From NCBI RefSeq assembly GCF_031769215.1, contig NW_026781898.1, positions 310,001 through 374,000 of the forward strand: 64,000 bases of DNA, read 5' to 3'. This DNA comes from Ylistrum balloti. Its lineage: Eukaryota. The notes beneath the pieces are model-generated. The model was not told where the DNA came from, did no database searches, and saw only the letters and a list, made by a program, of their open reading frames with translations. A program made the position numbers and the translations under genes. Positions 14,319 to 40,053 of this stretch are shown here, piece after piece. How positions within the stretch are numbered: the first letter of the stretch is position 1; every line of letters begins with the position of its first letter.

Positions 14319-15783
14319 ATGGTACAAGGAAACAGTTCGCCAAAACGTGTCATGTCGGCAAGTCGGCGGAAAAATCCGTCTCAGCTAGCCGAATCGGAGG
14401 CTAAAGAAACACCGCGACAGGCACGTGTCAAGAAATCGACTTCTAAATTTGAAAGAGGCGTACAAAATATGTTGGAAACGTCGGAGACGTTGGTTTCTGG
14501 GGAAAAGTCTGAAAAGAAATCGAGCAAAAACTCGAGAAAAAGTGAATATTCTAATGAAAAGCGTATAGTTAATTTAAAAGATGTGAAAAATTCTAGTGTA
14601 AAGGAAAATATCATTGGAAATGATAAACTTACTAGTTCCCCTAAACTTATAGCTAGTAGAGATTTACGGAAGGCGAGCATAGGGTCGCATGACAGTATGA
14701 GTTATCGCCCCTTGAGACCTGTTTCCGGTCCCAGTGACCGTCTCGTGAGACCTGGATCCGAGGATAGCGTAAGTTCGACAATCAGACAAGAAAGAGAAAG
14801 ACTGTCTTCCCGTAAGGACAGTTCTTACTCGACCTACATTGAGATTACCCATAATGCATCAGAGGACCTCATAGTGGTAGAAAACGCCGATTCCGATTGG
14901 TCTAACAGTGATGACCTTATTCCTGAAGTTGAGGAAGTCGATCTTCAAAAGTCAAAACCAAGTGCAAAACCGGAAGTTGATGAAAAAAAGACAGAGAAAG
15001 AATCAAATCGACGAAGAAAACGCCGACCAAGGACAAGGAAAAAGAAAGAGAAGCTAGGACGCAGGTCAAAATCAGCAAATGACGGGGACGAATTTAAAGC
15101 CCGTGCAGACCACGTGATTGTAACGGACTTGGAACATATTACACAGGAAGTTCCTGCTGAACCTGTCTATGTACCACACGATATATGGGTCGTAAGTACT
15201 CATTAAGTTACAGTTTTTACAGTAATATGTCTAAGATCAGCATGTTCAGAAAATTTGTGTTGTTGCTTCTCTATAAAAGTGTCATCTTTTAAAGTAAAAA
15301 TCTATTTTGTATAAGAAGTAAATAGTTTTTCCTTTAGAATTATTTTCTGTTTCTAAGCCCAAATTTACCATCCGTGCGTCTAGCGCAAAGTTGTTACTAG
15401 CAACAGGTGCCTCTCTATCTTGCTTACATGTCCTAATATGTATCAATCTTATTGCAAATGTTCCGATGTTATTTAGATTCCGCAACGTATAAAATTTCAT
15501 ATTAATAGTATACATATCTCTTCACTAGCCCAAACGACGCATGCGCGAGAAAGGCAAGCAGACGATGGTGCGTGTAGGAGGAGGTTTCATGGACTTGTCC
15601 TACTATTTACATCATCATGTACCAATAAAGGTTTATCAGCCAAAGCCGTACGCCCAGCTCTTCAACAAGCACATGTTTATGGTCAAGTCTAAACGTCCAG
15701 AATTAGCTACTGGCCATAAACACTATGATCGTCCAAGTTGGACGACCATGAACAAAGGATTCAAGGCCTTCGCCTGTATATAA
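14319..15783 (+). CDS. Cluster gene G2: exons 14319-15191 and 15529-15783, about 375 aa, disordered protein with a truncated GAR (GAS2-related) motif
   Basis: ataATGG with an in-frame stop just upstream, donor GTC|gtaagt at 15192 and acceptor cttcactag|CCC at 15528 (phase 0). Exon 2 contains TMVRVGGGFMDLSYYLHHHVP, resembling the GAR C-terminus VMVRVGGGWxxLxxYLxxHDP. Confidence 0.85.
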
Positions 15784-18057
15784 AACCACAGAGAAATCTC
15801 GAACGGATTGATATTTCTGAATGTTGACGTTAGCTGCCGAACATTACCGAGTATCAACGAGTATAAAGCAGTAATCTGGAAGCTCTGTGTAGTTCTTAAG
15901 ACAGTAAATGTAGTTATATGAGTGATAAAAATGTGCCATATATATATTATCTATGTTCTTACTCGTAGTAGTTTTGATTTGTTAATGATTGAAGGCGTAA
16001 TTCACAGATATCACGGGTCGTAGTGGCCCGAACCCCTATTACATCGTTGGTACGTGTTATAGAGAATATACTTATGTATTGTACAGTAATTACATTTATA
16101 AGTATGTATATTCACGTACCTGGCCCCTTTCAGAACTATCTCTAATTTACCTAGGTAGAATAGCATTTCGCATGAGTTAGCATGTTGTGTTAGTTTTGCA
16201 TTACCTTGAGCCGATTAGAATTACTGCCATTTTCCCCTTTAATGTATTTTCCCCTTTAATGTATATGCCCATAATGGAAGGCGTCGTACTCAAGTGTATT
16301 TGTTGACATTTGTCACGTGAATATTCAGTCAATTATCCAGTCACTTATATGGGTAATATATCGAACTCAATAAGATGATCTTCAATGTAAATTATATATA
16401 ATCAGGTAATACCATTCAATCAACCCATGTACCTGTATAGATTGATTAATTATAAACACAATTCAGTGATATCACATCTCATATCCAAATTAGTAATATA
16501 TTCTTTGAATGAAATTGATTTTTGTTTAGATTAAACACCTTGATGGAACTGTGTGTTATCTCCCGTTGAATTAGATGCATTTATTACGTACACAGGGAAT
16601 ACCTTTCATCCAGGCCATCTCAACCCTTGATTTCACTTTTTAAAAGAAAGATCCGAAATGTCTCGGTTGGTATCGTGTTAGAATTCCTGTATTTAATAAG
16701 GATTCTTTCTTTTTAAAGTTTAAAAAACATGTAATTTATTATAAATTAAAAACAAAATGGTTATATTAAGTCTATTTTTTGACGAGTAGATCATTTATGC
16801 CACTAAAACATCATATTCCTTCGGTGTTTAGACAAGGTCTTGATTCCCTAAATTGTCATTATTTTGTATCGTATGTTAACAGTACGTGTCCCTTGTTTCT
16901 ATGTTTATGCAATGCCAGATATACGAAGGCATATTTCTGGTATCGACTTACCAATTAACCATGCCCATTTGTCCATTTTTCAAAGATGTCGGCATAATGT
17001 AAAAAATGTAAATGTTATCATCATATATATATGTATATATATTTAAGTATATGTTTATAAATAGTTTATCATCCTTTATTTTACACTGTGTCGTCTTTAT
17101 AATGATATTAAATGGGTCATTCAGTTTGTAAGGGTTTCATTTAAGATTACCTTGTAAAATGTGAGAAAATCTTCTTCTTTAATTAAATCAAAATGATTAA
17201 AAACAAGTTGTTTCTTTCTGATTATTACGGACGGAAGTGAAACCAGACGGCTGACAGAAAAGCACAAAGGTTGGACAGCTGACATACCTCATCCGGCTCG
17301 TCAAGATGAAGGGCGCCATCTAGTTTACCAAAACTTTCACAACGGCATTAAAAATTTCTCTAATTTACGATACTTTTCCCGTCATAAAGTTTTGTCAACT
17401 TGCCAATATATGGAGCTTGATTTTTTAATTTAATGCTTAACATACATGTATTATGATTTGATAAAATCACGTATGTACACGTACGCATTCCGATAAAAAA
17501 ACCGTATCTTGAAAATTAGTAAATACATACTACGTCTGATCATCTATTCATTAAAAGCTTGCGATGATAAACTAGTAAACCATTAGAACAATCGTCGGCT
17601 TAGACACATACAGGGATGGTTCAACTTTGAGTAGTCTCCCTTATATATATACGGTAAAGTATTTAAAAGGGCAGAACAGAACTAGTTCCTTTTGCTATGG
17701 TTTGACAGAGACGTAAATATCACATATCTGAGTTCTGTACGTCTCTCGGTTTGGTATACTTCGACTGGGAGATGGATTATATACGGAATTCACTTATTTC
17801 AACTTATACATTCTGTAACAACGAAGGGCATTAAAACCCTAGTTTTAATTATTTACTGTTTATTACAAGCATATGATACCATTGATATGGAGGGACACAA
17901 AAACAAATCAAAAATAGAAAAGAAAATCACTAAATGAGTACAGTGGATCCATAATGTTACATAAAACCCAGTATCTTTTTTTTTATATTTTTATGTTTCG
18001 CCAAGATCTGCTGGTATCCGTGGACAGCAAGTGCCAACTTCACCTTAGAAATCACAG

Positions 18058-18760
18058 CGACTATACATATCAATCGGTAAACATGCCACAGTCTTGACTA
18101 TACATGTCAATCGGTAAACATGCCACAACCTTGATATACATTTCAATCGGTAAACATGCCAGAGCCTTGAATGTACATGTCAATCGGTAAACATGCCACA
18201 ACCTTGACTATACATATCAATCGGTAAACATGCCACAGCCTTGACTATACATGCCACAGCCTTGACTATACATGTCAATCGGTAAACATGCCACAGCCTT
18301 GACTATACATGCCACAGCCTAGACTATACATGTCAATCGGTAAACATGCCACAGCCTTGACTATACATGTCAATCGGTAAACATGCCACAGCCTTGACTA
18401 TACATGTCAATCGGTAAACATGCCACAACCTTGATATACATATCAATCGGTAAACATGCCACAGCCTTGACTATACATGTCAATCGGTAAACATGCTACA
18501 GCCTTGACTATACATGTCAATCGGTAAACATGCCACAGCCTTGACTATACATATCAATCGGTAAACATGCCACAGCCTTGACTATACATGCCACAGCCTT
18601 GACTATACATGTCAATCGGTAAACTTGCCACAGCCTTGACTATACATGTCAATCGGTAAACATGCCACAGCCTTGACTATACATGTCAATCGGTAAACAT
18701 GCCACAGCCTTGACTATACATGTCATTCGGTAAATATGCCACAACCTTGATATACATATC
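18058..18760. repeat. Minisatellite, 37-bp unit gactatacatgtcaatcggtaaacatgccacagcctt with 21-bp deletion variants
   Basis: Directly visible tandem array. Confidence 0.96.
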
Positions 18761-19596
18761 AACAAGTCATAATGAGGTTTCATGCCGGAATTTTTAAAGG
18801 GAAAGTAAGGAAAACTATTCAAGGCTATTTACTCCAGTAGAATTTGTTACAAATCATTTCCTTTCCAAACTATTTCACGCACGTAATCACATAATATACT
18901 GTAATGATGAAATGATTGATCAAATTAGTTTTCAAATTGCATTATCAACTGTGCTGATATGTGTTATGATGACAATACTGTCCTAGCGCTTTTATTCAGA
19001 AATTGTTTTTCTTTACGTAAAAATGAGTACAAATGAGTTTTCACATCTGTATTTTGGTTATAGAATTTTTTCTACATAGTATGAGCAATGTCCATGTTGT
19101 GAAAGGCGAATATCAATCTTCCGGACTTCCACAAGAAAGACTTTAAAACCAGTTTTGATCAAAGGGGAACAACTCAGTCTAGATTCTGTATAAAATCTAG
19201 ATTACAGAATCACGAAACTTGATGAATTATGGGGATAGTGCTACTTCATATGCGTATCTATATTTCAATATTTTGTTCGATCTGTTTAAACTTTCCTCAA
19301 CAGCCTCCAAGAATCAGCTGTATGTTGCAGTCTAATTCATTATTTGGCTTTAATGTATCTAGTTCTAAATTAACAATGAAATGTGATTTCTATTGTGTTT
19401 TTTTACAATCTTCTCGATATTGTTCTTTATGACGCGTATTCCTTGGGTATTTAAGGCTGCATACCCGAAGACTGGTGGTAAGTTTATGTCGAAATGTAGC
19501 AGTGACCCATAAGATAGGTCTAGCACAGTCTAAACCATGTAAGCACCCTGGTTCATCCCCGCCAAAGAAGGCAAATATGGTTCCATCAGCTGGAAA

Positions 19597-19910
19597 GATT
19601 ATGGTGTCAGTTTTGAATTGATTGAACACCCGTCTTATTCGCCTTATCTCTCTACATCAGACTTTCATCTACATCTGTATTTCCAAAATTAAAAAAGGCA
19701 ATTTTCAATGCTCACTTTCGGTCAAATGATGATGTCATACATGCAGTGAGGACTTTCTGAATGGTCAAGAAAAAGACTTCTTTAAAAGTGGCATCGCTGG
19801 CAGAAGTATATCGTATATTGAAAGCGATTGTGTTGAAAAATAATGCAATATGTCAGCCATAAGTCAAACCCTTAAATATGAGGCTCACAACTCATCAGTC
19901 AGCCCTCGTA
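19597..19910 (+). mobile_element. Mariner (Tc1/mariner) transposon relic: transposase C-terminus and right end
   Basis: IEHPSYSPYLSTSDFHL matches the mariner HPPYSPDLAPSDFHL motif. It continues FPKLKKAIFNAHFRSNDDVIHAV, then a frameshift to DFLNGQEKDFFKSGI...IESDCVEK*. It ends in cagccctcgTA, a TIR-like end with a TA site. Confidence 0.85.
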
Positions 19911-21441
19911 TACACAGTAAAGTATATCGAAATCGTAGTTTTCCGAGCTGTTATTGACATAGAGTGATCTCCCTTGTATATAAGATTTCCCCTGTATGGG
20001 ATTACTTGTCTTATCATGATAAACAACAGTTAAAGACAACAAAATTATGTATTTTGACTTTGCTATGATATTATAATTAGGATGATATCATTATACTTTC
20101 ATTTGTGAACGTTGAGCTTAGACAGACCTTGATTTTTTTTTCTAATTTTCATGTATAGAAATAATATTTGATACCAAATAAAGTGTTGCCATCGGATATA
20201 AATCGTGGTACAGGTTGAGTGGTATTGAGGCCCTGATAACATAACACTGATAGCGGTTATTGTCTGTGAAAAATAAAGCTATCGGAGCGACAAACCAGGG
20301 TCTCACATACAACAGCCCGAAAACAATAGCAACGTGACCGATATAGATCGCACGCGATGAAGCGACGTCATACAACACAATAGGTATATCTAATGTCTTA
20401 AGACAATGGCGGTGAATTATATATATCCGGATACCTTCGTCTAGGTGACGATAGGCTAGAATTAAGCTGCTAAGTGTTGTCTGCCATACTTGACGGAATA
20501 TTTACAACTGGAACTGGCTGGAGTTGGAAGAACGGGTTTGGAATTTCATTTTAGTCTTTTATATTCCGTTTGGTAGTTTTTCCATCGTAAATGTATATCT
20601 GAAGTGTCGAGTTTTTTTTAATAAGTTTATTAGATTATATTGTTCTTCAGGATATGCGTTGATTATGTATCGATTTAAAAACACCCTTCTAGTATACCTG
20701 TGACTGGCTTTGTGGATTAATGACAAAGAATGATGAAACATAAAATATTCACTTGGAGATAGGGTGGAGAACGGAAGCGCCATCGTCATCAAGGTCGTGT
20801 GGAAGTCTATTGTTATTGTTTTTATGTAATATATATATATAAATATATTGTTACATTCGGCTAACACGAGGTAATTTTGTTGCCAATAGAGAACAAACCA
20901 ACGTATCAACAGAAAAATCCACAGGACGAGTAATTCTGTAACAGGAAGGTGATAGAATAATGTGTGGTCGATATAAGCCAAAATGTTGTTTTAAGAATAT
21001 CCATTAGCAGCTATGAACAGGACAACTTGACAATTTTTGCCAGTAGATTTTTAAAAAAGATTATTAATCCTTATTGATTTCACTCTTACAAGACTCCACG
21101 ATTGAGACGTTTTAATGTCGGCGAATATATTCACAAGTCAAACATCTCGTATATTAAACAAATCACGACACAGACATGGAAAAGCAGACGACCTTTACGT
21201 ACGACGGTATAATCCGCGAGAATAATCAGATACCATGAACCATTTATATACATCAATGTATACATAATTTGATTGAATCAATCTGGGTAAAGGAACTGTA
21301 TATATGTGTACAAGAACGTCGAAACTGGAAATGAACGTGACAGCAAGAAAAACACTCCTCAGTTAGTTGTGTTTCTTTCTGAAATTTTCTTATGGAGAAA
21401 CTGAGTTTGATGTGAACTGAGTCCTTAGTAAACGAGCCGAA

Positions 21442-22329
21442 ATGGCTAGTGAGTTTTTCGCGAGGAAGTTAAATCTAGAGCTAGCTTTGAACCCGCTTTT
21501 CCATGGCCCACACGAGGAGTTAAGGGAGGAAACTCCCCCACCAAGGGAGGTCAAGGTCACTATAAAAAAGGATTTTACACAGAGAAATTATGGCAGCCAT
21601 AGCACCAGGAGTCAGTGGAAACTCAGCACCGAAAGTAATATAAACAGTTTTGAATTTAAGCATCGAAACCCAAAAGGTGTATACGACTTTCTTAAAGTAA
21701 AAATAGAACGCGAGAATGCCAGGAGTAAACGTGCTAAAATTAAAAAATCCACAGGCAAAGTTAAAAAGGTGGACGAGACAGAAAACGGAAATGGTGTTGA
21801 AAAGGAAGCACGTGAAGTCATTGTAGAAGCAGAATCAAATCCTCGTGAAACTGATAAAAATGGTGCTGAATCAGAAAATAACAACGACAAACAGTCAACA
21901 ACAAATAAACTGCCAGAAACCGGAAGTGAGAAGAGTGGAGTGGTACCAGAAATACTACATTATTCGGACGAGTTCACAGAGGGTCCGCTGGAGGTGTACG
22001 AACCTGTATTTGTGCGGTTTCCTGTGTGGAAGGTAACATAATTTGCTTTGAAAATTTGTGTTGTTTTAAAAAGTGGAATCTTTTCCGGATCTTTATGTAT
22101 GCGTCCCCTTTTTATTTGACTTAATCTACGATATAAAATTCCAGACAACGATAGCTTTGTTCTGAAATTTAACAACATTATAAATGAAATTGATAGTAAT
22201 AGCTTTTTTCCTATTTTCAATGTTTTATTAGGATACGTGTGTATTTGTATGATAATGGTCAGCTTCTGCTTCTTACAATACATTATATATTTTATTCTCT
22301 TTCAGCCAGCTAAACTTAATCACGACTGA
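21442..22329 (+). CDS. Cluster gene G3: exons 21442-22032 and 22306-22329, about 204 aa; the terminal exon is reduced to PAKLNHD*
   Basis: gaaATGG start, donor AAG|gtaaca at 22033 and a strong acceptor ttttattctctttcag|CCA at 22305. The exon-1 end EILHYSD...PLEVYEPVFVRFPVWK matches G1 (EVIHYID...AIEPFEPVFIQPHPVWE). The exon-2 assignment is less certain. Confidence 0.7.
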
Positions 22330-23289: not shown

Positions 23290-24850
23290 TAAAGAGGAAC
23301 CGGACGACTGGCGATAAGGTGTGGAGACCAGGGAGGAACCAGAGGACGACTGGCGATAAGGTGTGGAGACCAGGGAGGAACCAGAGGATGACTGGCGATA
23401 AGGTGTGGAGACCAGGGAGGAACCGGACGACTTGCGATAAGGCGTGGAGACCAGGGAGGAACCGGACGACTTGCGATATGGTGTGGAGACCAGGGAGGAA
23501 CCAGAGGACGACTGGCGATAAGGTGTGGAGACCAGGGAGGAACCAGAGGATGACTGGCGATAAGGTGTGGAGACCAGGGAGGAACCAGAGGACGACTGGC
23601 GATAAGGTGTTGAGACCAGGGAGGAACCGGACGACTGGCGATAAGGTGTGGAGACCAGGGAGGAACCGGACGACTGACGATAAGGTGTGGAGACCAGCGA
23701 GGAACCAGAGGACGACTGGCGATAAGGTGGTGAGACCAGGGAGGAACCGGACGACTGGCGATAAGGTGTGGAGACCAGGGAGGAACCGGACGACTGGCGA
23801 TAAGGTGTGGAGACCAGGGAGGAACCAGAGGACGACTGGCGATAAGGTGTGGAGACCAGGGAGGAACCAGAGGACGGCTGGCGAAAAGGTGTTGAGACCA
23901 GGGAGGAACCGGACGACTGGCGATAAGGCGTGGAGACCAGGGAGGAACCGGACGACTGACGATAAGGTGGTGAGACCAGGGAGGAACCAGAGGACGGCTG
24001 GCGAAAAGGTGTTGAGACCAGGGAGGAACCGGACGACTGGCGATAAGGTGTGGATACCAGGGGGAACCAGAGGACGACTGACGATAAGGTGTGGAGACCA
24101 GGAAGGAACCAGAGGACGACTGGCGATAAGTTGTGGAGACCAGCGAGGAAGCAGAGGACGTTTGATTTGGTATTGAACCCAATGAGAACTGGAAGACGGG
24201 TGATGAAATATTGAGGATGAAGGAACTGGAGGACGGGTCATGAGATCTGGAACCCATGGAGTTACCGGAAGTCGGGTGATGAAGTGTTGAGCCCATAGAT
24301 GAAATGGAGGACAGATAATGAGGTGTAAAACCCAAGGAGGAACCGTAGGACGGGTAGACACCAGAGGACGGGTGATGAGGTCTCAGGAACCCAAGTAGAC
24401 ACCAGAAGACGGGTGACGAGGTCTCAGGAACCCAAGTAGACACCAGAGGACGGGTGACGAGGTCTCAGGAACCCAAGTAGACACCAGAGGACGGGTGACG
24501 AGGTCTCAGGAAACAAAGTAGACACCAGAGGACGGATGACGAGGTCTCAGGAAACCAAGTAGACACCAGAGGACTGGTGACGAGGTCTCAGGAAACCAAG
24601 TAGACACCAGAGGACGGGTGATGAGGTCTCAGGAAACCTAGGAGGAAGTGAAGAACGGGTGATGAAATCTTGAATCCAAGGAGGAACCTGAGGTCTGAAA
24701 CTCAAGCAGGAAGCCGGGGAAGGATGATTAGGTTTGAAACTTTGAGTGTTCCGGGTGCTTTAAACCAAAGAGGAACCGGAAGACGGACGATGAGGTCTAG
24801 AACTAAAGGAGGAACCGGAAGATGGGTAATAAGGTCCGGAACTCTGGGTG
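23290..24850. repeat. Compound purine-rich minisatellite: 42/39-bp units (23290-24170), a related 41/42-bp unit (24354-24640) and degenerate copies between and after
   Basis: Unit ggaggaacc(aga)ggacgactggcgataaggtgtggagaccag; second unit gtagacaccagaggacgggtgacgaggtctcaggaacccaa. Confidence 0.95.
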
Positions 24851-24857
24851 TAAATTA

Positions 24858-25091
24858 GGATACCCTGCAGCGGGCCAGTATTGAACAAAGACGAATAGGG
24901 CATTGGTTCCGAATAACCGAATCGACTACAACACATTGTTACCATCTTGTGTACTTTTTCTATAATTTTTTTTACCATCTCATCACACTATTTTCTACCT
25001 TAGTGTGCATAGGTATGGAGTACAGTCAGTTGGTTCGTTACCATCTCGTGCACTACATAAGTCTTGTAAGCTTCACACTGGTCATTTGTCA
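24858..25091 (+). mobile_element. 5'-truncated Penelope-like fragment (end of the ORF plus 3' tail)
   Basis: Aligns by eye with 358-630. Shared blocks include gatac..gcagcgggccagta.tgaa, ttaccatctc.tcacactattttc.accttagtgt.cataggt and acactggtcatttgtc. Confidence 0.8.
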
Positions 25092-25995
25092 GTGTAGTCA
25101 TTGAAACATCACACTCACATCTTCTACTGGTTGTGTTATAAGATGAAGGTGACAGTGTAGTCATTGAAACATCCACATCTTCTACTGGTTGTGTTATAAG
25201 ATGAAGGTGACCGTGTAGTCATTGAAACATCCACATCTTCTACTGGTTGTGTTATAAGATGAAGGTGACCGTGTAGTCATTGAAACATCCACATCTTCTA
25301 CTGGTTGTGTTATAAGATGAAGGTGACCGTGTAGTCATTGAAACATCCACATCTTCTACTGGTTGTGTTTTAAGATGAAGGTGACCGTGTAGTCATTGAA
25401 ACATCCACATCTTCTACTGGTTGTGTTATAAGATGAAGGTGACCGTGTAGTCATTGAAACATCACACTCACATTTTCATCACACTCACATTTTCTACTGG
25501 TTGTGTTATAAGATGAAGGTGACCGTGTAGTCATTGAAACATCCACATCTTCTACTGGTTGTGTTATAAGATGAAGGTGACCGTGTAGTCATTGAAACAT
25601 CCACATCTTCTACTGTGTGTTATAAGATGAAGGTGACCGTGTAGTCATTGAAACATCCACATCTTCTACTGGTTGTGTTTTAAGATGAAGGTGACCGTGT
25701 AGTCATTGAAACATCCACATCTTCTACTGGTTGTGTTATAAGATGAAGGTGACCGTGTAGTCATTGAAACATCACAATCACATTTTCTGCCAGTTGTGTT
25801 ATAAGATGAAGGTGACCGTGTAGTCATTGAAACATCACACTCACATTTTCTACTGGTTGTGTTATAAGATGAAGGTGACCGTGTAGTCATTGAAACATCA
25901 CACTCACATTTTCTACCAGTTGTGTTATAAGATGAAGGTGACAGTGTAGTCATTGAAACATCACACTCACATTTTCTACCAGTTGTGTTATAAGA
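25092..25995. repeat. Minisatellite, 58-bp unit (63-bp variants) gtgtagtcattgaaacatccacatcttctactggttgtgttataagatgaaggtgacc
   Basis: Directly visible array with period 58 (e.g. 25213 to 25271). Confidence 0.96.
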
Positions 25996-27251: not shown

Positions 27252-28460
27252 ATGGCCACCATTGAGTGTTGGCAACCTTATACGTCTCTAGATCAACTAC
27301 TAACCTCCTCGCTAGTGCTGACGGATGGGGAGGAGGAGGTGGAGCACGTGAAACAAGAACTTCCCAGGTCTACCCGACGGGCAATTAAGTTCATACGTAA
27401 TCAGAAACTCCGCCCAAAACCTGGATTTCGACGACGGGAAACATGGCTTGAGAACCAGCTCTCATTATCAGCAGGAATTGACATTCTATATCACGATCAG
27501 GTGAAGAAAGACAATCGTGGGACTTTGCAGAGTCAATCTTCCCATTCACCAAGATCCTCCGAAGAACACAAAAACCGATGGATTGGGTTGGATTTATTAT
27601 TAGACCCAGGCATTCAGAATTCTTCCAAAAAACCGTCCAGGACACAACCGTCTAAGACTGTTGTTTACAAAAGGAAGAATTTAGATACACCTGTGTATCA
27701 TTTAAAACAACCCTTTGAACCTATCCCAGTATACGAACAGAGAAATGGAATAGGAAAGCGTAAAAGTAGAAGTCCTAGACATAGCAACACGATTAAACGC
27801 CTCGAAGACACAGATAGAAGCAAGAGTTTGGAAGACATTGATAAAAGTGAGAGTGTGCGTGATGGTTCTAAAGGAAACAACACAGGGAGCATCTCAAAAC
27901 CAAAAACCTACACCGAAATTCTTCATTACGTAGATGGGGCGACGTCTATGGGTGTCATCGATACGTTTGAACCTATCTATGTTATAAGCAGGAAAACAAA
28001 GGTATGTACACACAGACAGTGAAATGTTTTATATGTAATGCTTTACTGTAATCTGTAAACTTACGTCACAATGAACGGTGACGTCATAATTTAGTTTTAT
28101 AAAGGTCATATGTAATTGAAATAGTTTGAGTCTAATTCATTTTCTTTGTCAATTTTTCTTTTCTGTTCCAAATTTTCAAAAACTACCTCTCTTTATTTCC
28201 GGTTTTATTCTGTTTTTTATCCAAAATTAGTTTATTATGTGAATTAATTACGTACAGTGACTATTTACATTTTAGCAAACAAATGTAAGTTCATGCATGT
28301 CTTGTTTAGTTTCAACTATTATTATTTAATAGAAGGTACGTATGACATTGCCTTGGCGGTCATTTTTGTTTTCCATTAGGAGTTCAGCGTGTGCTCCTCC
28401 GATATAGAATCGTTAGGACTTGATACTTACCACAGTGACGTCACCAGTCAAGGTCACTGA
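27252..28460 (+). CDS. Cluster gene G4: exons 27252-28001 and probably 28380-28460, about 276 aa; no GAR motif
   Basis: acaATGG start, donor AAG|gtatgt at 28002 and acceptor tttttgttttccattag|GAG at 28379, giving EFSVCSSDIESLGLDTYHSDVTSQGH*. The exon-1 end EILHYVD...IDTFEPIYV matches G1 and G3. Confidence 0.7.
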
Positions 28461-31400: not shown

Positions 31401-32246
31401 CATCTATTTTGATACATGTTTACATATAAACATGTATTATAAAGTTAACCTAAGCCACTGTTAAAAGGGAGAGGAATCACGAACAAAAATGAACTGCATT
31501 TTGTATATACTGTATATAAGAGGTATTCCGAGAGCTAGTCCAAATGGTTCAGAGTTTACAGAAAGTTTAACTATTCCGTCCTGGGGTAGACTGTTATAGA
31601 ATGTCACCCATTAATTTAGGAGGGCAGTATATCGATTGAATTAAATCAGCGTCACTTAACAATTGTTCTATGTATAATGGTGTCATATTACACAGGTTTT
31701 CAGATAAACACATGTATATTGTTATGAGTATCCGTGTGTTATTGAAATAGTGCAGTAATACTTGCCGATCGAATGTCATCTGACGCGATCCCCTGGACAA
31801 GGCTCACCGAGCAAAACCGTTCCTAACAAATCGCTTTGACTATCTAAGCGTATAGCGTTTATAACGTGGCCAATTATTCTCTGGGTCGGGTATATGTTTG
31901 TAACAAGTCGGTCCCCACAAAGCCGTATCTCTTATTATGCTTCTAGCCTTGGAAATGTAAGTGGTTCAATTTGGCAAATTAAGTATTCTATAGAATCGCG
32001 TGATTTTTGATCGAAACTTGACATAGATTACAATATAACATTCACACAACACCGAGTCTTCTAACATGGATTATTTAAATGTGTTGACGGTTTCTAAGTA
32101 CAGGATTACAAACTGTGGATTATATCACTGCCATTCCGAAAGTGTTTGTCACACGCGCGTCAGCACAAGCTACTTATACATTTTTTCGTTAGTCTCCAGT
32201 TTAACTAGTAAAAGTGGACGAATTCAAGGACATTGATGCTCTCAAG

Positions 32247-33743
32247 ATGAGGTTGTGTGAAGAGCTGAAACAATGGAAATTGTGTTTGCCGAACCAACCG
32301 TATATGTTACCAAACATGCCTAAAAAGAGGTGTCGGCGTCGAGTTAGGCGGAAACGGAAACCACCGGAACCACCCGAGAAAGTCATTGTCACTGTAAGTG
32401 ATGCAGGCACGCGGAAAGTTGCCGTGCAACGAGTGGTCCCAAAACGTGAAAAACAAGACTCGAGGAGGCTGAGAACAGAAGAAGGAGAAGGAGAAGAAAA
32501 TGGAACTGAAAAAAATCGTTCTCACAACATGTCTACACAAACTACATTTCATGACCTTGAGTTCCTCCTCACAGATCCCCGGATTCAGGAGACGAGGTCT
32601 AGGAGGGAAATGCTACCAGGCGAGGTGATCTACACCCGTAATACCGCTGCCCAGCGAACATACCGCACTGGAGACACAACTCTAAAAGTGGAACATCTGT
32701 CTACAGACAATATTGTCGTCCAAATTGACACGAACACCCCAGCGCGCGGACGATCGGATAATGGAAAAGTACGAGGAGATGGTCGAGAAAACCATGAAAA
32801 CGGACGCAAGGACATCGAGTGTGGAAAAAACGAAGAAAAGGATGAAGGAAAGATGAATGAAGAAAAAGACAAAAGAGACAAATCTAATGGTAAACAAACT
32901 ACATTTTCAAACGAAGCTGTCGAGATAATCACAGAAAAGACAGAGAGTACAACGAAGGTTCGCCCACCCAGCAAGGTAAGGAATTTACAACATTCCGTAC
33001 CTTATATACATTAAGCTTCATCGATTTCAAAATTAGCTTGGATTAAATATCAGTGTATTAAATACCACCAAAGTCGGTGACCAAATCATATAGGTATTAC
33101 TGATAAACATCGAGCTGGAATGGTACTTAATAACTCTATCGGGAACGCCATAGATAATGTATTTTCTAAAATCTGAAATTTTTTATGTTTGTGATCTGTC
33201 TTACCGTTATATTGTTATATTTAGTTATATTGTTTGTGGTTCTATCTATCATCTATTTATTATATAAACATTAACAACAACACCAATTACGAAATAATTT
33301 CTGTATGTGGTGATTTGAAGTAAAGAAAAAAGCAAACGATGGTGATAATTCTGTTAAAAGCGGTATTGTTATACTGTGGACGAATATTGTAAAGTTGTAA
33401 ACAAATTGGATTGAAATATAGAAATTGTACAAGTCCTTGTGTATATACTATCTGAACCTTTTGACACGTGTTTCAGGTGGCTAAAGCGTGCGGACATAGG
33501 CTACCTATGGTTCGCGTAGGAGGAGGGTGGATGGAAGTCCCAGATTATCTTCGTTTCCACGTGCCGATGCACGTGCATGTCGAAAATACAAAAGATGGAC
33601 AGGAAGGAAATGTGATAATAAGGTCACAGCGACCAAGGTCACAACTGTTCTCAAAGAAAGGAGAAAGTCCAAGCTGGACGGCCACATTAAGTAGAGGCAC
33701 AAAAGGGAGCGCTTCAACGACAATGAGACAAAGACTTGTATAG
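32247..33743 (+). CDS. Cluster gene G5: exons 32247-32975 and 33477-33743, about 331 aa, disordered protein with a truncated GAR motif
   Basis: First ATG is aagATG at 32247 (the ORF is open from about 32205). Donor AAG|gtaagg at 32976 and acceptor tgtttcag|GTG at 33476 (phase 0). Exon 2 contains PMVRVGGGWMEVPDYLRFHVP. Confidence 0.82.
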
Positions 33744-36700
33744 GAAAGGAAATTACGAGATACGGTGACGGATTGAGTTTTTGCGAGAAGCAAAAATAGC
33801 CATAATTATCACTGCACGACGATAAATAAGTCAGCGTGACTGTTTTTGGCGGTGTAAAACATGCCGATTTCTGTGTGACAGTTGACAGGCTGATGTGATG
33901 CGCAAAAGCAAAATATTTTGTATTTTTTTTTGTAAACGCTAAAGGTCACTGTAACCTTATGGTGGAAATAGTTTGACCTTTGTGTGAAAAAAAGTTGGTT
34001 TGCTTAAGTCACTGATGTAAAATGTATGTAAGTTCGAGAAAAGAATTGATAAGATCAACGTCAAGACTACCACAATGAACGGCATCATGGGATAGATGTC
34101 GGCACGTGACACAATACTGGAAGTTGATTGGATACTGTTTTGATCGGATGTTATTCCGATGAGAAAAGTGCGTGATGATACTGCAATTTTCTCCACAATG
34201 TTAGAATTATTTAGAACTATAATGTCCTAAAACTGCCATTTTCCTGCGGTGATGATCGTGTCATACTGCTGTGTCGAACGTGTTAAAAGTATGGTTTACT
34301 TATTCATTCAATGAATACAAAGAGTCGTATACGTGTATCATATCCCGTAACAGCGTTATAAGTCTGATTGATTCACTTTCATAATTCATATAAATAGACT
34401 AAGATGGTCACTATTCCATAACCAGAAGGTCGTTAGGTAAGTCCAAAGTGAATCGCTGGCGCCATTTAACTGGTGAACACTCATCTTCCTCTGATATTAC
34501 TAACTTCATGTTTATTCTAAACCTTACACTTCGTTTTAATTACTGTTTTAATAAATTTCTTTTTTTTCAATTTTTAAATGTCGTTGAATCTATTACACAG
34601 AGTTGTAGTGTGGAAAACTTTTTACACCGTACTACACTTAAAGGGAGGTAACCCTTATATCCAGTATGTACAAATGAACAACGTTAGAGAAGCAATCATA
34701 AGTCCTATAATATATCAAGCTAGCTTTATATATATTGCGTAATTGTACAAACAGCAATTATACATGTAGACGTGGTATAACATATTCTATGAAATTTCAG
34801 ATTATTCTGTAAATTTGAGAGAAATGAAAATACCCAATCTCCAATGTTGGAGTTCATAACATCTTTGAAGCGGTACGTTCTTCTATGGCGTACTTCAAAA
34901 ATCAAGTGACCATCGAAAACAAAATGGAATGATATTCCTTATTCTTTTATATTCAAGATGGCGACTGACAAGTATCACGGACAATGATCTGTAGGGTATC
35001 GTTTTCTCAATTAACTCTCTCACCTGACTATTTTTTTAAATAGTTACTCATTTTATGACTTGGTTGTCCTTTGGTAGGACAATTTACCCTAATAAATTGT
35101 TGGCGCCAAATGACGGACCTCCCATATCTTGTTCAGTGAGTTAGTCACCACGTACTTTAAAGAGACCCCGCTTCAATCAATCTAGTTAATATATAAATCA
35201 TCATTATATGATACATTTTAATGCTTCATGAAATATTGTACAATGATAACTTGTATTTAAATCAGACTGCGCTTCATGTGGAATCTCATGTTCAATTTAT
35301 TAGAAAAGATAATTGAAAAAAACTACGGTATTACATTATTTAAAAATTGAATTTCTGGATGAGTGCGGGTCAGAAAGATAGGATTTTATAGAGAAACACG
35401 TGAAACCTGAACCCCGAGTATACATACATGATATCTAATTTTGTAATGAATTCTTCTGATTCTTTTGGCTTTTATCTGATTATACAGGTTCAGGTGTGGC
35501 ACTAGACATTTAAATTTCAATTCATTTATCCGAAATATTTCACAACGAATCATTAAATCCGCTACAGACATAGCACTTATTAGAGGTAATTCTGTCTCTT
35601 AACAACAAAAATATTATGAAATAGACTAGTATTTTCAAAATTTAATTCAAAGATCAATTTTCGTCAGTCATTGGATATCTGACCATGTCCAAAAATATCT
35701 ACATATTGAAAACTAAAATGCATAATATGGGCCTACTTTTAAAGGAATTTTACAGAGGATAATTCGTGGTGGCCTTGGGATAAGTTTCGCCTACTCGCGA
35801 ATATACCGATATACATGTTATATTTTACAGCACCTTTACATGATTACCGCATGCTCACTTTCAAAAACTGTGTGGAATACTTTTAAGTTCAGTATATCAT
35901 ACCTTTAAATTTGTTGTATAACGATCTATAACCGGTTTTAAAGCTCGGCAATGTTCACCTGAACACTTAACTATTGTACATATATTTACCATCATCAGTA
36001 CTTGTGTGCCTGATCATTGTATAATTACATATACTCGTAACATGTTCACGTAGAATGGTTTATTTTGAGACAAAGGATACATATACAATGTACTAGGAAT
36101 GTCCTTTTTAAAAGAGACGCCTGCTCACACGGTTACAAAAGCCCTTTAAAAGGTCGCCCGTTTCGGTACCTACGTTTTAAAAGTCATTTCTGCCACAAAT
36201 AACAGTTCTTGAAAGCGACTTCCCTTCCGTAATATTACCTCTATAAAGCGATCACATGTCTGCATAAGTCACGTTAATAAAGCGGTCTCTGTCAATAGTA
36301 AAATAATACTTTATAAAGTGACCTGATCTTTCTACAAGTTACATCTGTGAATCGATTGTGTGTCGCTCTGCTGAAAACTTTCGTAGACCCGATTAAGGCG
36401 AACACCTAACTGAGGAAAACATGACTTGTACGTAGAAAAACGGCCACAAGGATGTATTGAAGCCGTTTCATATATCGTTTCATTTTCGCTGTCTGAATGC
36501 GTCAATTATATAAAGTGGCAGTATTTCTGTAATTATCATGTCTGCTAAGCTATCAGATGTCTGCACAGTATCAACCTCTATGAAGCGATCACATTTAAAG
36601 TAATCGTCTTTATGGTTAGGAAAAAAACCTGTATAAAACGACCAAATTCGAATCTGGGTCCCATGCAATGCTAATGTATTAGCTAAAAAAACTCTATAAA

Positions 36701-37350
36701 ACCCGATTTTTATGCGAATACATTTTATAATGTATAATAGCCTCTTTAATATATAGACATATTTTTGTATTGTATGATGTATATCATTTATACTGCTGAA
36801 ACCAAGTTTCTTGGGTATTATGCATTTTATATTATCCTTCCATTCGTCTTTCTCTCTGTCGGTCCGTCACTGTGTGTCACTGGTTGCTTGTAGTATATAT
36901 GATCGTCTTAAGATTTGGTTACCCCAATCAAGTTCAGAGTCCAAACGCTATAAACTGAAAGTCATCAAGGGTGTGAAATAATTTAACCAGCCAACTTTCA
37001 AAACACACGTTTATCGTTGTATATTGTACTTGAAGCAAGATAATGTATACCTATCCTATGCAGAAATGCTCCAGACCCTTTATCACATCTCTGTCGCCCT
37101 AGATGTCATTATTCTACGTCTTTAGATTCATCTATTTCTCACTAATATGAATGACGTTGCTGAATACAAAATTTGACCCGACAACTTCATGTTTGATCAA
37201 ATATTCATATCATATTTATAATTGCATACTTATTACATCCTTCTTTTACCCGTACGTTGTTTGATGAACCAAGATGTGTCACCCTCCGCCATACAAACTG
37301 TACGAGGGTGTAGAGTGATACATGTCTACTACTAGTGATCACAATGCCAT

Positions 37351-37403
37351 CTAACCTCACTCTAACCTCACATAACCTCACTCTAACCTCACTCTAACCT
37401 CAC
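37351..37403. repeat. Short tandem repeat, ~11-bp unit ctaacctcact (~5 copies)
   Basis: Directly visible. Confidence 0.85.
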
Positions 37404-38499
37404 CTATAGGACTAGAACAAATGGTCTTGATAGCAGGGTAGTCTAAACAGTGGGTGTGACAAAGCAAAGTTTCCCTGTGACCATTTTTGTCCGTATGTTA
37501 ACCATCATTGAATTAGTGTTTTTGTTTTACATAATGTTAAATACCCAGGAATTTGTCTGAAAAGCAAGATTGGCAATTGTATACACAGTAGATGTACAAG
37601 ATAGAATACACGGAAGGCAACTATGTGACCGGTCAGTGGTCTGATGAGCGAGGTAAAATTGAATGTTAAACTCGTCTTTAGGACTATCTTAAAAACTTGT
37701 GAGAGTTACTAGGAAGCGAGGTTTTACTGTACGTACGGCGGTCGCTATGCACAGGTACTTTTCCTGTTACTACCAATGATAACAAGTGTACTGCGGTCGC
37801 TATGTTCAGGTTGTTCCCCTGTAACTGATGGCATATACGCTAGAAAATCAATACTAGGGTGTATAGTGATATTTTCATCTTGATATCCGTACACCCTGGT
37901 CGCTATATTCAGGTTGTTCCTCTGTTATTGATAGCATACACATACTAGATATTCTCCGTGCTACCCTTTAATCTTGGTCGCTATGTACCAGTTGTTCCTC
38001 TGTTAGTTAATTGTACACGTACCAGATCAATACCATACACACATATGGCTTACTTTTGTTATTACCGCCGCCAATATGTTGACCATCACACTGAAAACCT
38101 CGTCAATATTGATCTAAAAACTAACAAGGGAAAATCATTTGACCGATCAGAGAAAATCTTTCGTACAATAGCGTAAGCGTGTGTGTACCTGAAATTGACC
38201 TACCCTGACACAACGGTACGAGACACCGATACTCCTACACGTATACACTATAGATATATTTATCTACATGTATGTGACAGGGTCTGTCGTCGCTAAGCTA
38301 AATAAGTAAGTGTCACTTGAAGAGAAGAACCCACAGGTGAACAGCGTGCTTAGCAAGGCCAAGTTTCAATGAAAATGTATAAACGACTATGGACATTTGC
38401 GTCGAACTGACAAACAAGATTTATAAGGGTGTGTATTAATGACATCTGATTCATGTGAAAGGTTAATTAGTCCGAACGGCAAAGAGACTGGATTTAGAA

Positions 38500-40053
38500 A
38501 TGTCTCTTCGAGAACATCGCGCTTCCTCGTCAAGGAGATCTCGGAAACGTGAAAAGGAGAGTGTGTCAGATGAATCCGGTGATGAAGGTCGTGTTTTAAT
38601 AAGGCGACGCCCTGCGTCGGCAAGTGATCTTCGACTGCCTGAATATCGTCATTACTCAGGCGATGATAAAACTCAAAAAAGGTTTTACAGGAAGGAGAAA
38701 AAGCTCACACGGGGCACCCAAGAGGAACGCACACTGGAATATGTCATGAGCAGTGGACAGCAAGAACAGCGCCGTCCTGTGACGAGGACGGCATATCAGA
38801 GTGACGGCGAGGAGATATATGATAGTGAGACCGGAAGTGAAAGTACCATCCGGCGCGTGAAGGAGCACATGCGTTACTATGCAACACAAAATACCCGAGC
38901 TGCGTCGGATATGGGCGACAGAGGCATCGTGTACTACAACGCGCGCAACCACGGCCGTGCGATGTCCGATGTCGGCACACAACTCGTGCAGCATGTGCAA
39001 CAGGACAGTATGCGAGAACACGGACGTGTTGGCAGGCCTGGGTCGGCATTCAGTCAACAGGTCATGCAGACAAGAGATGGTGACCGTCTTGTAGAGGTGG
39101 AAACAAGAGAGGAAGGCAACAAGATATATTATAACTACCGTCTAAAAGCGGAACCAAAGCCTCCTCCGGCCCCTGTAAGACATATGCGCCACGTGGGAGT
39201 ACAGATGACCACCAAATACGTTGCTGAGCAATCACCACCGGTCAAAACTAGGAATAGTGGCACGCAGACTACAGCCCCACCTCCGAAACCAAAACCCAAA
39301 CCTCAAAGACAGATATTAGTAGCTCGTCCTGAAACACCCCCTCCGCCACTTGAGGTTATGGAACCTGTACCTGCGGTGGTAAGTAGCCATAATAATAATT
39401 TCTGTGTCCTTTTTTTATGTTTTTATTGTGGTCATATCGCGAGTAAAGTTATTGACAAAAATGTATTATTTCTCTTATTTCCGAATCCAAATTTTGAAAT
39501 TAATAATCCTTTAATTATAGGTCCTATAGCATTCACAACTGTAAGAATAAGTTACAAATATCACTTACTGGTCTAACTCTTATGATCCGTATACAGGAAT
39601 TTAACTTTACTGACTCTTTGGCACGAAACAAATCCCGTGGTTTAGGAGTCTTAACCAACTAACATCTACGTTACTTCAAATTACTGCGAAACAACTCTCT
39701 TCATGCTAGTCACATACATTCGGAACAGATGATTCCCACCAATAATTCGGATAAAAACAATGTTTGTTCAAACCCAGTGATACAAATCCGTGTACATTAC
39801 CTTTTATATACTTGTATGTTTTATTTACTTTCAGATTCCCAAGGCCAAGTCGGTGATGGTACGTGTGGGAGGAGGTTGGATGAAAGTGGAGCATCACCGT
39901 AACCACCATATACCTGTCAAAGTTTACGAACATAAACGACGCACAAGCGTAGACGACAAGTTCCTTTTTATTAAGTCCCGGTTTGCTCGGAAGAAGAAAC
40001 AAGTACCCATAGCTTATAAAATGTATAGAGAAAAATTGGTGCTGGATAATTAG
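38500..40053 (+). CDS. Cluster gene G6: exons 38500-39378 and 39835-40053, about 365 aa, disordered protein with a truncated GAR motif
   Basis: gaaATG start, donor GTG|gtaagt at 39379 and acceptor ttatttactttcag|ATT at 39834 (phase 0). Exon 2 reads IPKAKSVMVRVGGGWMKVEHHRNHHIPVKVYEHKRRTSVDDKFLFIKSR. Confidence 0.88.

What the first reader, a model, noticed from the sequence alone, without database searches (positions are those of the whole stretch)
15529..40053. Terminal exons look like a captured GAS2 last exon: a half-GAR with no CH domain
G2 (TMVRVGGGFMDLSYYLHHHVP), G5 (PMVRVGGGWMEVPDYLRFHVP) and G6 (VMVRVGGGWMKVEHHRNHHIP) match the GAR C-terminus (VMVRVGGGWxxLxxYLxKHDPC). The N-terminal GAR strands, the Zn-binding cysteines and the calponin-homology domain of GAS2/GAS2L/spectraplakins are absent. 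The downstream D[KR][FY][LM]x[VI][KR][ST] motif (G1, G6, G7) resembles the vertebrate GAS2 tail as I recall it (..HDPCRML..DNYLVVSASYKAKK). G6 exon 2 starts 7 residues before the Met, like MLHNKHV-M in GAS2. The inference is that exon shuffling fused a GAS2 terminal exon to a new disordered exon, which then amplified.
Basis: partly seen in the sequence, partly recalled or inferred. Interest (0 to 1): 0.8.

Follow-up and report, generated by a model that had tools for sequence, protein, structure and literature searches.

The report
GAS2 last exon reused in bivalves
A tandem cluster of scallop genes ends in a copy of the last exon of the cytoskeletal gene GAS2, which keeps the microtubule-touching hairpin and dimerising tail but not the rest of the protein. 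The family is shared by scallops, mussels, ark clams and pearl oysters and is under strong purifying selection.

Summary
The window is Ylistrum balloti (scallop) and carries seven tandem + strand genes. Each has a long, basic, disordered first exon and a short last exon behind a phase-0 intron.

- **GAR match:** the last exons of G2, G5 and G6 hit Pfam GAS2/GAR above the gathering score, but only profile positions 42-68 of 69.
- **Extent of homology:** profile-profile comparison with true CH+GAR GAS2 proteins gives E 3.5e-16. It covers exactly the GAS2 last exon, meaning the G-hairpin, helix alpha2 and the C-terminal tail motif.
- **Intron:** pearl-oyster GAS2 has the same phase-0 intron, 7 residues before the Met of MVRVGGGW. 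Capitella GAS2 has it at the homologous site after the conserved FIR, 6 residues before its Met.
- **Missing parts:** no CH domain or N-terminal GAR half is encoded anywhere in the 64 kb.
- **Age and constraint:** the CH-less family forms one clade in scallops, mussels, ark clam and pearl oyster. Terminal-exon dN/dS is 0.03-0.11.
- **Origin:** in Pinctada a family cluster lies directly downstream of GAS2, which points to partial tandem duplication.

The retained residues are those shown in mouse GAS2 to contact tubulin, plus the counterpart of its dimerisation tail. Function is inferred: an actin-blind microtubule binder or bundler, or a GAS2 partner. This is a new variant of a known kind.

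The parts
5448..6770 (+). G1 exon 1: disordered and basic, ending in the motif EVIHY...FEPVFIQPHPVWE, with donor GAG|gtaagc in phase 0
   Evidence: ORF and donor. 441 + 72 aa equals the 513 aa of the Mizuhopecten ortholog.
7374..7592 (+). G1 last exon: tail-only copy containing DRFLVVKT, with no GGGW hairpin
   Evidence: Family HMM E 4e-4 over profile positions 27-64; acceptor shown.
14319..15191 (+). G2 exon 1, disordered
   Evidence: Mizuhopecten ortholog P0019 is 56% identical.
15529..15783 (+). G2 last exon: half-GAR (MVRVGGGF...YLHHHVP, Pfam stretch 15550-15630) plus tail (KHMFMVKSK)
   Evidence: Pfam 25.7 bits. 87% identical to the Mizuhopecten ortholog. The exon starts 12 residues before the Met.
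21442..22032 (+). G3 exon 1, ending EILHY...YEPVFVRFPVWK
   Evidence: The Mizuhopecten ortholog is a 207-aa gene.
22306..22329 (+). G3 terminal mini-exon (PAKLNHD, then stop). G3 has no GAS2-derived module.
   Evidence: Conserved acceptor and peptide in Mizuhopecten.
27252..28001 (+). G4 exon 1. No last exon of its own was found. In Pecten maximus the orthologous exon is annotated as spliced over G5 and G6 to the G7 last exon.
   Evidence: The arithmetic fits: 241 + 86 = 327 aa, sharing its end with the 282-aa G7 gene (196 + 86).
32247..32975 (+). G5 exon 1, disordered
   Evidence: Pecten ortholog P0022.
33477..33743 (+). G5 last exon: half-GAR (MVRVGGGWMEVPDYLRFHVP, Pfam stretch 33507-33569) plus a degenerate tail
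   Evidence: Pfam 23.0 bits. dN/dS 0.03 against Pecten.
38500..39378 (+). G6 exon 1 (LOC132552832): disordered, carries the RHVGVQMTTKY motif, donor GTG|gtaagt in phase 0
   Evidence: P0001 is 100% identical.
39835..40053 (+). G6 last exon: the best-kept copy of the GAS2 last-exon module. It has the G-hairpin (VMVRVGGGW), a His-rich helix (EHHRNHHIP), the tail (VKVYEHKRR...DDKFLFIKSRF) and a family-specific end (VPIAYKMYRE).
   Evidence: Pfam 26.7 bits. hhalign to GAS2 gives E 3.5e-16. 64-90% identical in mussel, ark clam and other scallops. dN/dS 0.07.
42844..43431 (+). G7 exon 1: disordered, carries the RNVGVQMTTNY motif
   Evidence: E 1e-14 against G6 exon 1.
46292..46573 (+). G7 last exon: a degenerate copy that has lost the hairpin glycines and Trp but keeps the tail (DKYMYVRPS...GYEMYMER). 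It is used as an alternative last exon by G4 and G6 in other scallops.
   Evidence: Family HMM E 7e-3. Mizuhopecten isoforms P0004 and P0005. Pecten annotation.

Best explanation
**What is shown.** The window holds a tandem cluster of seven genes of a bivalve gene family. In the ancestral members the last exon is a duplicated copy of the last exon of GAS2. That copy was cut at the ancient phase-0 intron inside the GAR domain, just after the conserved Arg of ...FIR. It is joined to unrelated first exons that encode basic, disordered protein. The copy lacks the CH (actin-binding) domain, the first three GAR strands and the N-terminal CxC. It keeps the beta4-beta5 G-hairpin (R-V-G-G-G-W), helix alpha2 and the GAS2 C-terminal tail. 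The family predates the split of scallops, mussels, ark clams and pearl oysters. All exons are under purifying selection.

**What is inferred about origin.** The family most likely arose by partial tandem duplication of the 3' end of GAS2. It then amplified and diverged. G6 is conservative. G2 and G5 are divergent but keep the hairpin. G1 and G7 keep only the tail. G3 has lost the module.

**What is inferred about function.** The module is a minimal tubulin-groove-binding hairpin with a dimerising tail, and the basic disordered exon adds lattice affinity. These proteins would therefore bind and perhaps bundle microtubules without linking them to actin.
For: **Homology and its limits**
- Pfam GAS2 scores above the gathering score but covers positions 42-68 only, in G2, G5, G6 and most relatives tested.
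- hhalign of the family against 15 true GAS2 proteins gives Prob 98.7, E 3.5e-16. P0001 residues 295-346 align to Pinctada GAS2 residues 271-327, and nothing upstream aligns.
- True GAS2 of molluscs, brachiopod, nemertean, annelid and spider end in the same tail, [FY]LxIKS[KR]YK.

**Intron**
- Pinctada GAS2 reads ...ATCAGG|gtaggt ... ttgtag|TTTTTG. Its last exon starts FLKNRHLM-VRVGGGW.
- G6 reads ...GCGGTG|gtaagt ... tttcag|ATTCCC, starting IPKAKSVM-VRVGGGW.
- Both introns are phase 0, 7 residues before the Met.
- Capitella GAS2 has the intron at the homologous site, after FIR, 6 residues before its Met.
- Human c.616-2 and c.723+1 flank one exon.

**No hidden exons**
- Six GAS2 proteins hit the window only at the three last exons.
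- A mussel mRNA contig has in-frame stops upstream of its ATG.

**Single origin, age and constraint**
- The family is one clade with support 97/91.
- Members occur in Pecten, Argopecten, Mizuhopecten, Mytilus, Tegillarca and Pinctada.
- dN/dS is 0.03-0.25 with dS about 1.

**Origin**
- Pinctada GAS2 lies at 8,179,144-8,183,936. Family-type ORFs follow from 8,189,599 and P0051 lies at 8,195,590-8,199,407, all on the same strand.
- Bivalve GAS2 and the family share the stretch xP[VL]xV[FY]EH[KR]R.

**Function**
- In mouse GAS2, R252E raises the Kd from 0.69 to 47 uM and W257E raises it to 27 uM. G255, K266 and H267 also contact tubulin. Residues 277-314 are needed for dimerisation and bundling (PMC12084551).
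- The family's invariant columns are R, V, G, G, G, M and P, with one His nearly invariant. These are the counterparts of R252, G254-256, H267 and P269.
- AlphaFold2 models a hairpin, a helix and a tail beta-hairpin at pLDDT 75-80 in the hairpin and helix.
Against: - No binding, folding or expression data exist for any member. No RNA run is available for this species.
- The GAR fold is described as depending on zinc, and half of it is missing. The overall model confidence is only moderate (pLDDT 65), and Foldseek finds no significant fold match.
- The missing beta3 carries K237 and R242, which also contact tubulin.
- The residue after Trp is Met, as in MACF1-type GARs, not Asp as in GAS2. Trees cannot place the family relative to bivalve GAS2.
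- Adjacency to GAS2 was seen only in Pinctada. In the scallop window GAS2 is not within 5 kb upstream of G1.
- G1, G3 and G7 have lost the hairpin yet stay under constraint, so the hairpin is not the only selected feature.
Confidence: 0.7

Rival explanations
1. The half-GAR cannot bind tubulin by itself. The selected feature is the GAS2-type tail, which lets these proteins pair with full GAS2 or with each other. They would then act as CH-less partners or dominant-negative regulators of GAS2 cross-linking, or as scaffolds that bring the disordered exon to GAS2 sites.
For: The mouse GAS2 C-terminal region is necessary for dimerisation. G1 and G7 keep the tail but not the hairpin, and remain constrained (dN/dS 0.11 for G7 exon 2). 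Half of a GAR fold described as zinc-dependent is missing.
Against: The hairpin residues R-V-G-G-G are the only fully invariant block across 18 hairpin-bearing family members. That is not expected if only the tail mattered. The tail of the family has diverged from bivalve GAS2 and gained its own extension, VPIAYKxYRE.
Confidence: 0.2
2. The module has been re-purposed for something unrelated to microtubules. One possibility is a metal-dependent interaction through the new His cluster (EHHRNHH) that replaced the YLxxH helix in the G6-type members.
For: The four His residues at i, i+1, i+4 and i+5 are conserved from scallop to ark clam. The usual zinc ligands are gone. The first exons carry their own conserved motifs of unknown function.
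Against: G2 and G5 keep the GAS2-like YL...H helix without the His cluster. The conserved core coincides with the tubulin contacts mapped in GAS2.
Confidence: 0.07
3. The match is convergence or chance on a short glycine-rich motif, or the models are truncated and unseen upstream exons supply CH and the N-terminal GAR half.
For: Each Pfam hit covers only about 25 residues at 20-27 bits. G1 and G5 sit in ORFs that open with GTG, so their starts are inferred.
Against: The profile-profile E-value is 3.5e-16 over 51 columns that include the tail. The intron is identical in position and phase. A family cluster lies next to GAS2 in Pinctada. RefSeq models in four scallops start at an ATG in exon 1. 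The mussel mRNA has stops upstream of its ATG. There is no CH or N-GAR coding in the 64 kb.
Confidence: 0.03

Closest known systems
GAS2 (growth arrest-specific 2) of bivalves and other invertebrates, e.g. Pinctada imbricata P0082 and Crassostrea gigas P0085
   Same: The whole last exon corresponds. It starts at the same phase-0 intron and has the same order of G-hairpin, helix alpha2, V[FY]EH[KR]R and [FY]LxIKS[KR][YF]. The family shares the bivalve-specific EH[KR]R and the loss of the DPC zinc ligands.
   Different: The family has no CH domain, no GAR strands beta1-beta3 and no CxC. It has unrelated disordered first exons. Asp after Trp is replaced by Met. G6-type members have a His cluster in the helix and an added conserved C-terminal extension, VPIAYKxYRE. 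The family is multi-copy and clustered.
GAR domains of spectraplakins (MACF1/ACF7, Shot) and GAS2-like proteins (GAS2L1-3, pickled eggs)
   Same: They share the VMVRVGGGW hairpin. MACF1-type domains also share the Met after Trp.
   Different: The one MACF-like sequence compared (P0066) lacks the GAS2 tail motif. The pickled-eggs sequence P0098 was cut to a 95-residue window, so its true C-terminus was not seen. The MACF-like sequence does not group with the family in the half-GAR tree. These proteins carry a complete GAR with zinc ligands.
Disordered microtubule-associated proteins that bind through short motifs, such as the tau/MAP2/MAP4 repeats (analogy only, from general knowledge)
   Same: A basic disordered chain combined with a short glycine-containing turn that would contact tubulin.
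   Different: There is no sequence relationship. Here the motif is a fragment of a globular domain, and microtubule binding is untested.

Membership tests
GAR domain (Pfam PF02187 GAS2) | Profile match above the curated gathering score | tested here: met
   25.7, 23.0 and 26.7 bits against 21.3 for G2, G5 and G6 last exons. Several relatives fall just below the cut-off.
GAR domain (Pfam PF02187 GAS2) | Complete domain: N-terminal helix and strands beta1-beta3 (profile positions 1-41) | tested here: not met
   All family alignments start at profile positions 37-47. hhalign aligns nothing upstream of the last exon. Exon-1 ends compared with GAS2 give Prob 0.1%.
GAR domain (Pfam PF02187 GAS2) | Zinc site (CxC in the N-terminal half, D-P-C after helix alpha2; ligand identity is from my memory of Lane et al. 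2017) | tested here: not met
   The CxC region is absent. DPC is replaced by [IVT]P[VLIM]. Bivalve GAS2 itself has [RT]PV there while keeping CxC.
GAR domain (Pfam PF02187 GAS2) | Tubulin-contact residues of the G-hairpin and alpha2 (mouse R252, G254-256, W257, K266, H267) | tested here: met
   R, V and GGG are invariant. W is present in all but the G2 type, which has F. The His equivalent to H267 is nearly invariant. The mapping follows PMC12084551.
GAS2 protein family (CH + GAR architecture) | N-terminal calponin-homology domain | tested here: not met
   No PF00307 hit in any family member, whereas true GAS2 controls hit it. No CH coding in the window.
GAS2 protein family (CH + GAR architecture) | C-terminal tail after the GAR, needed for dimerisation in mouse GAS2 | tested here: met
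   The tail motif aligns with that of invertebrate GAS2. Dimerisation itself was not tested.
GAS2 protein family (CH + GAR architecture) | Phase-0 intron inside the GAR, after the conserved Arg of FIR, with the last exon starting about 7 residues before MVRVGGGW | tested here: met
   G6 and Pinctada GAS2 are identical in position and phase. Capitella has the intron at the homologous site, 6 residues before its Met. G2 and G5 last exons are 5 and 3 codons longer at the 5' end, still phase 0.
GAS2 protein family (CH + GAR architecture) | Binds microtubules and cross-links them to F-actin | not testable with these tools
   Needs co-sedimentation or imaging. Actin binding through a CH domain is excluded by its absence.

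The most novel reading that the evidence does not exclude
Half of a GAR domain that is described as zinc-dependent has become an autonomous module. The GAS2 tail would fold back as a beta-hairpin to replace the lost strands, and a new HHxxHH cluster would replace the lost zinc ligands. Together with conserved motifs in the disordered exon, this would define a bivalve-specific class of microtubule-associated proteins that inserts a G-hairpin into the tubulin intradimer groove without any actin link.
Probability: 0.25. Interest if true: 0.7.

Novelty: new variant of a known kind. Interest (0 to 1): 0.6.

Why it matters
This is a clean natural case of a protein domain split at an exon boundary, with one half kept under strong purifying selection. 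The family is shared by four pteriomorphian lineages, a depth I take from general knowledge to be several hundred million years. The half that survives is the part mouse experiments identify as the main tubulin contact, together with the counterpart of the dimerisation tail. The family therefore offers a natural minimal construct for asking what the G-hairpin and tail can do alone. It also documents the birth of a multi-copy gene family by partial duplication next to its parent gene. Finally, it gives a defined origin to proteins now labelled "titin-like", "SRRM1-like" or "uncharacterized" in bivalve genomes.

Tried and rejected
1. **N-terminal GAR half hidden at the end of exon 1.** The motif EILHY...EPVFV looked loosely like EGKYxIFGKxVFIR. 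hhalign of eight exon-1 ends against the GAS2 alignment gave Prob 0.1%, and Pfam found nothing in any exon 1. Rejected.
2. **A degenerate full GAR inside G6/G7 exon 1** (LVEV..GNKIYYNYRLK...VRHMRHVGVQMTTKY). hhalign of the full-length family against GAS2 aligned only the last exon, and the stretch is not conserved in mussel or ark clam. Rejected.
3. **Identifying the donor by phylogeny.** Trees on 68 and on 36 columns show the family as one clade but leave its position relative to GAS2 clades unresolved. The donor is therefore inferred from the tail, the intron, shared bivalve characters and synteny.
4. **Two long multi-hit proteins in the exhaustive search (P0023, P0028).** They read as secreted proteins with repeated beta-rich units and no RVGGG hairpin. 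I take them for bacterial false positives; this was not checked with Pfam.
5. **Expression in this species.** The only run holding the stretch is a DNA-type assembly.
6. **Fold search of the AlphaFold2 model.** Nothing was significant. There were only local matches to 9kbw and 5ve9 at the hairpin.
7. **Atlas search of the conserved central part of G6.** No usable hit.
8. **Literature and earlier scan notes.** Searches by terms and by locus or accession names found no paper on this family. The scan's earlier notes hold nothing here.
9. **GAS2 gene look-ups.** Ostrea GAS2 and Littorina GAS2 were not on record, and neither was the Mytilus family member P0008. No pectinid GAS2 was recovered, so the species' own GAS2 could not be examined.


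Full report
**1. What is in the window**

The window is from the scallop Ylistrum balloti. The first exon of gene G6 is 100% identical to NCBI protein LOC132552832 (P0001).

Seven genes lie in tandem on the + strand. Each has a long first exon that is net basic, rich in Ser, Thr and Pro, and poor in aromatic residues. Each first exon ends at an AG|GTAAG-type donor in phase 0.

Short last exons were found for six of the seven:
- G1: 7374-7592
- G2: 15529-15783
- G3: 22306-22329
- G5: 33477-33743
- G6: 39835-40053
- G7: 46292-46573

G4 has none of its own. The finding's coordinates run from the G2 acceptor to the G6 stop.

**2. The observation**

- Pfam PF02187 (GAS2/GAR) scores 25.7, 23.0 and 26.7 bits against a gathering score of 21.3. 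It covers only profile positions 42-68 of 69.
- No first exon hits any Pfam family.
- A profile of the family's C-terminal module, searched against all PDB sequences, finds only GAR structures: 1v5r, 5ve9, 5x57 and 9kbw.
- G1 and G7 last exons match only the tail part of the family profile, at E 4e-4 and 7e-3.

**3. How far the homology goes**

An exhaustive HMMER search with the module profile gave 56 cluster representatives. Among them are true CH+GAR GAS2 proteins of gastropods, a nemertean, an annelid and spiders.

These true GAS2 proteins end with the same elements as the scallop exon: LLKGKHLM-VRVGGGW, then xxYLxHHxP, then V[FY]E[FH]xR, a short linker, and [FY]LxIKS[KR]YK.

hhalign of the full-length family against 15 true GAS2 proteins gives Prob 98.7 and E 3.5e-16 over 51 columns. 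P0001 residues 295-346 align to Pinctada GAS2 residues 271-327, and nothing aligns upstream.

Six true GAS2 proteins run by tblastn against the window hit only the last exons of G6, G2 and G5. The best E-value is 1e-9.

**4. The intron test**

- **Pinctada imbricata GAS2** (P0082, with CH and a full GAR): residues 270-334 are the last exon. The junction reads ...CAAATCAGG|gtaggt and ttgtag|TTTTTGAAG. The intron is phase 0, and the exon starts FLKNRHLM before VRVGGGW.
- **G6:** the junction reads ...GCGGTG|gtaagt and tttcag|ATTCCCAAG. The intron is phase 0, and the exon starts IPKAKSVM before VRVGGGW. Both exons therefore start 7 residues before the Met.
- **Capitella teleta GAS2:** it has the same phase-0 intron after FIR, 6 residues before its Met.
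- **Short gene predictions:** many in the exhaustive search begin ...FQ|LLKGRHVMVRVGGGW. This is a translated polypyrimidine tract plus CAG acceptor, and shows the same boundary in further species.
- **Human GAS2:** c.616-2 and c.723+1 are the two splice sites of one exon (PMC11218307). That puts a phase-0 boundary after codon 241. I infer this is the same site, using the mouse numbering and the one-residue difference in protein length; I did not check it on sequence.
- **G2 and G5:** their last exons start 12 and 10 residues before the Met, still in phase 0. The Mizuhopecten and Pecten orthologs agree.

**5. Nothing is hidden upstream**

RefSeq models of the G6 orthologs in Pecten, Argopecten and Mizuhopecten start at the same Met in exon 1.

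A 2.9-kb Logan contig carries the complete mussel-type protein P0007 as one open frame, with in-frame stops upstream of its ATG. I read this as a spliced mRNA. One supporting point is that the Mytilus isoforms diverge exactly at the module boundary.

Two attempts to find a degenerate N-terminal GAR half in the first exons failed.

**6. Age, spread and constraint**

Named members come from Pecten maximus, Argopecten irradians, Mizuhopecten yessoensis, Mytilus californianus, Tegillarca granosa and Pinctada imbricata. There is also a second Ylistrum locus on another contig.

Their source names are "uncharacterized", "titin-like", "serine/arginine repetitive matrix protein 1-like" or, in UniProt, "GAR domain-containing protein".

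In a tree of the last-exon region the CH-less family is one clade (97/91) and bivalve GAS2 is another (98/100). G2 and G5 form a divergent subclade (99/98). The relation between the family and the GAS2 clades is unresolved. Adding a MACF-like sequence does not change this.

Between Ylistrum and Pecten, dS is about 1 for most exons. dN/dS values are:

| Exon | dN/dS |
|---|---|
| G5 exon 2 | 0.03 |
| G6 exon 2 | 0.07 |
| G7 exon 2 | 0.11 |
| First exons | 0.08-0.25 |

These are working genes.

**7. Origin**

On Pinctada contig VSWD01000007.1, GAS2 lies at 8,179,144-8,183,936. On the same strand there follow:
- an ORF of 507 aa starting at 8,189,599
- an ORF of 407 aa
- the family member P0051 at 8,195,590-8,199,407, whose last exon starts PPPGPSVL-IRVGGGW

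The 507-aa ORF and P0051 carry the family's first-exon motif.

Bivalve GAS2 and the family share xP[VL]xV[FY]EH[KR]R, where gastropod GAS2 has DP[IV]QV[FY]EF.

Retention of the intron argues for a DNA-level event rather than a retrocopy. I conclude that partial tandem duplication of the GAS2 3' end, joined to new first exons, is the likeliest origin.

This adjacency was seen in one species only. In the scallop window no GAS2 exon lies within 5 kb upstream of G1.

**8. The cluster is not seven simple genes**

In Pecten a 327-aa gene starts at the G4-type exon and ends where the 282-aa G7 gene ends, spanning G5 and G6. The arithmetic fits a shared 86-codon last exon: 241 + 86 and 196 + 86.

Mizuhopecten isoforms X2 and X3 join G6 exon 1, plus part of exon 2, to the G7-type exon. 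The two internal GT sites they would use are present in Ylistrum.

G3 ends in a 7-codon mini-exon that is conserved in Mizuhopecten.

**9. How it may work**

An et al. 2025 (PMC12084551) solved mouse GAS2-GAR on microtubules.
- The beta4-beta5 G-hairpin (G254-G256) enters the tubulin intradimer groove.
- R252E raises the Kd from 0.69 to 47 uM, and W257E raises it to 27 uM.
- G255, K266 and H267 also contribute, and so do K237 and R242 in beta3.
- Residues 277-314 are needed for dimerisation, bundling and nucleation.

All of these except K237 and R242 lie in the last exon.

In 18 hairpin-bearing family modules the invariant columns are R, V, G, G, G, M and P. The His equivalent to H267 is nearly invariant. 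Trp is replaced only by Phe, in the G2 type.

AlphaFold2 on the module gives a mean pLDDT of 65, reaching 75-80 over the hairpin and helix. It models a hairpin, a helix and a tail beta-hairpin. Foldseek finds no significant match, only local ones to 9kbw and 5ve9 at the hairpin.

I therefore propose an actin-blind microtubule binder or bundler. The main rival is a tail-mediated partner or antagonist of GAS2. Both are inferences.

**10. Novelty**

No paper on the family was found. It is a new variant of a known kind: a GAS2-derived family that keeps only the last-exon module.

Noticed in passing
window 39187-39300 (G6) and 43213-43300 (G7); also L006 and proteins P0012, P0014, P0018, P0051: The first exons carry a conserved bipartite motif: R[DN]VG[VC]QMxTx[YF], followed 15-25 residues later by R[DN]xxTQT. 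It is sometimes duplicated and is shared by scallop, mussel, ark clam and pearl oyster members. It matches no Pfam family or Atlas cluster.
   Followed up: partly
window 6690-6770, 15120-15191, 21960-22032, 27930-28001: The exon-1 ends of G1-G4 share a second motif, E[IV][IL]HYxD...[FY]EP[VI][FY][VI], which is conserved in Pecten and Mizuhopecten orthologs. The G7 last exon begins EPQYIYVPK. The motif is unrelated to GAS2 by hhalign.
   Followed up: partly
window 39886 and 39922 (inside G6 exon 2); 46292-46573: Two in-frame GT sites inside G6 exon 2, after WMK and after PVK, correspond to the joins used in Mizuhopecten isoforms X3 and X2 to reach the G7-type last exon. The Pecten annotation also splices the G4-type exon over G5 and G6 to that exon.
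   Followed up: partly
window 39877-39921: G6-type members replaced the GAS2 helix xxYLxHH by EHHR[NY]HH. The four histidines at i, i+1, i+4 and i+5 are invariant from scallop to ark clam. This may be a new metal site after loss of the usual zinc ligands.
   Followed up: no
window 8139-9304, 10134-10989, 18059-18762, 23294-24160, 24354-24638, 25092-25995, 46860-47129, 55512-56143, 59215-59485, 62799-62947: Many minisatellite arrays with periods of 17 to 65 bp fill the spaces between the genes. Several create long spurious ORFs on both strands.
   Followed up: partly
window 59774-60211, minus strand: This ORF has a weak match to the PAT1 family (Pfam E 0.0014, below the cut-off). It is probably one exon of a PATL1-like gene on the opposite strand, downstream of the cluster.
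   Followed up: partly
window 17685-17789, minus strand: A weak match (E 0.017) of the family profile's tail part lies in an intergenic stretch after G2. It could be a decayed exon copy or chance.
   Followed up: no
L005 5930-7764 (minus) and 10001-10808 (plus), Pinctada contig at 54.17 Mb: A second Pinctada locus holds two family genes head to head. The neighbour of P0018 also ends in a hairpin (YHYVRVGGGWKKVKH).
   Followed up: no
P0040 (Batillaria attramentaria, 652 aa): This gastropod protein carries two complete GAR-like domains in tandem, each followed by a GAS2-type tail. It is another unusual GAS2 derivative.
   Followed up: no
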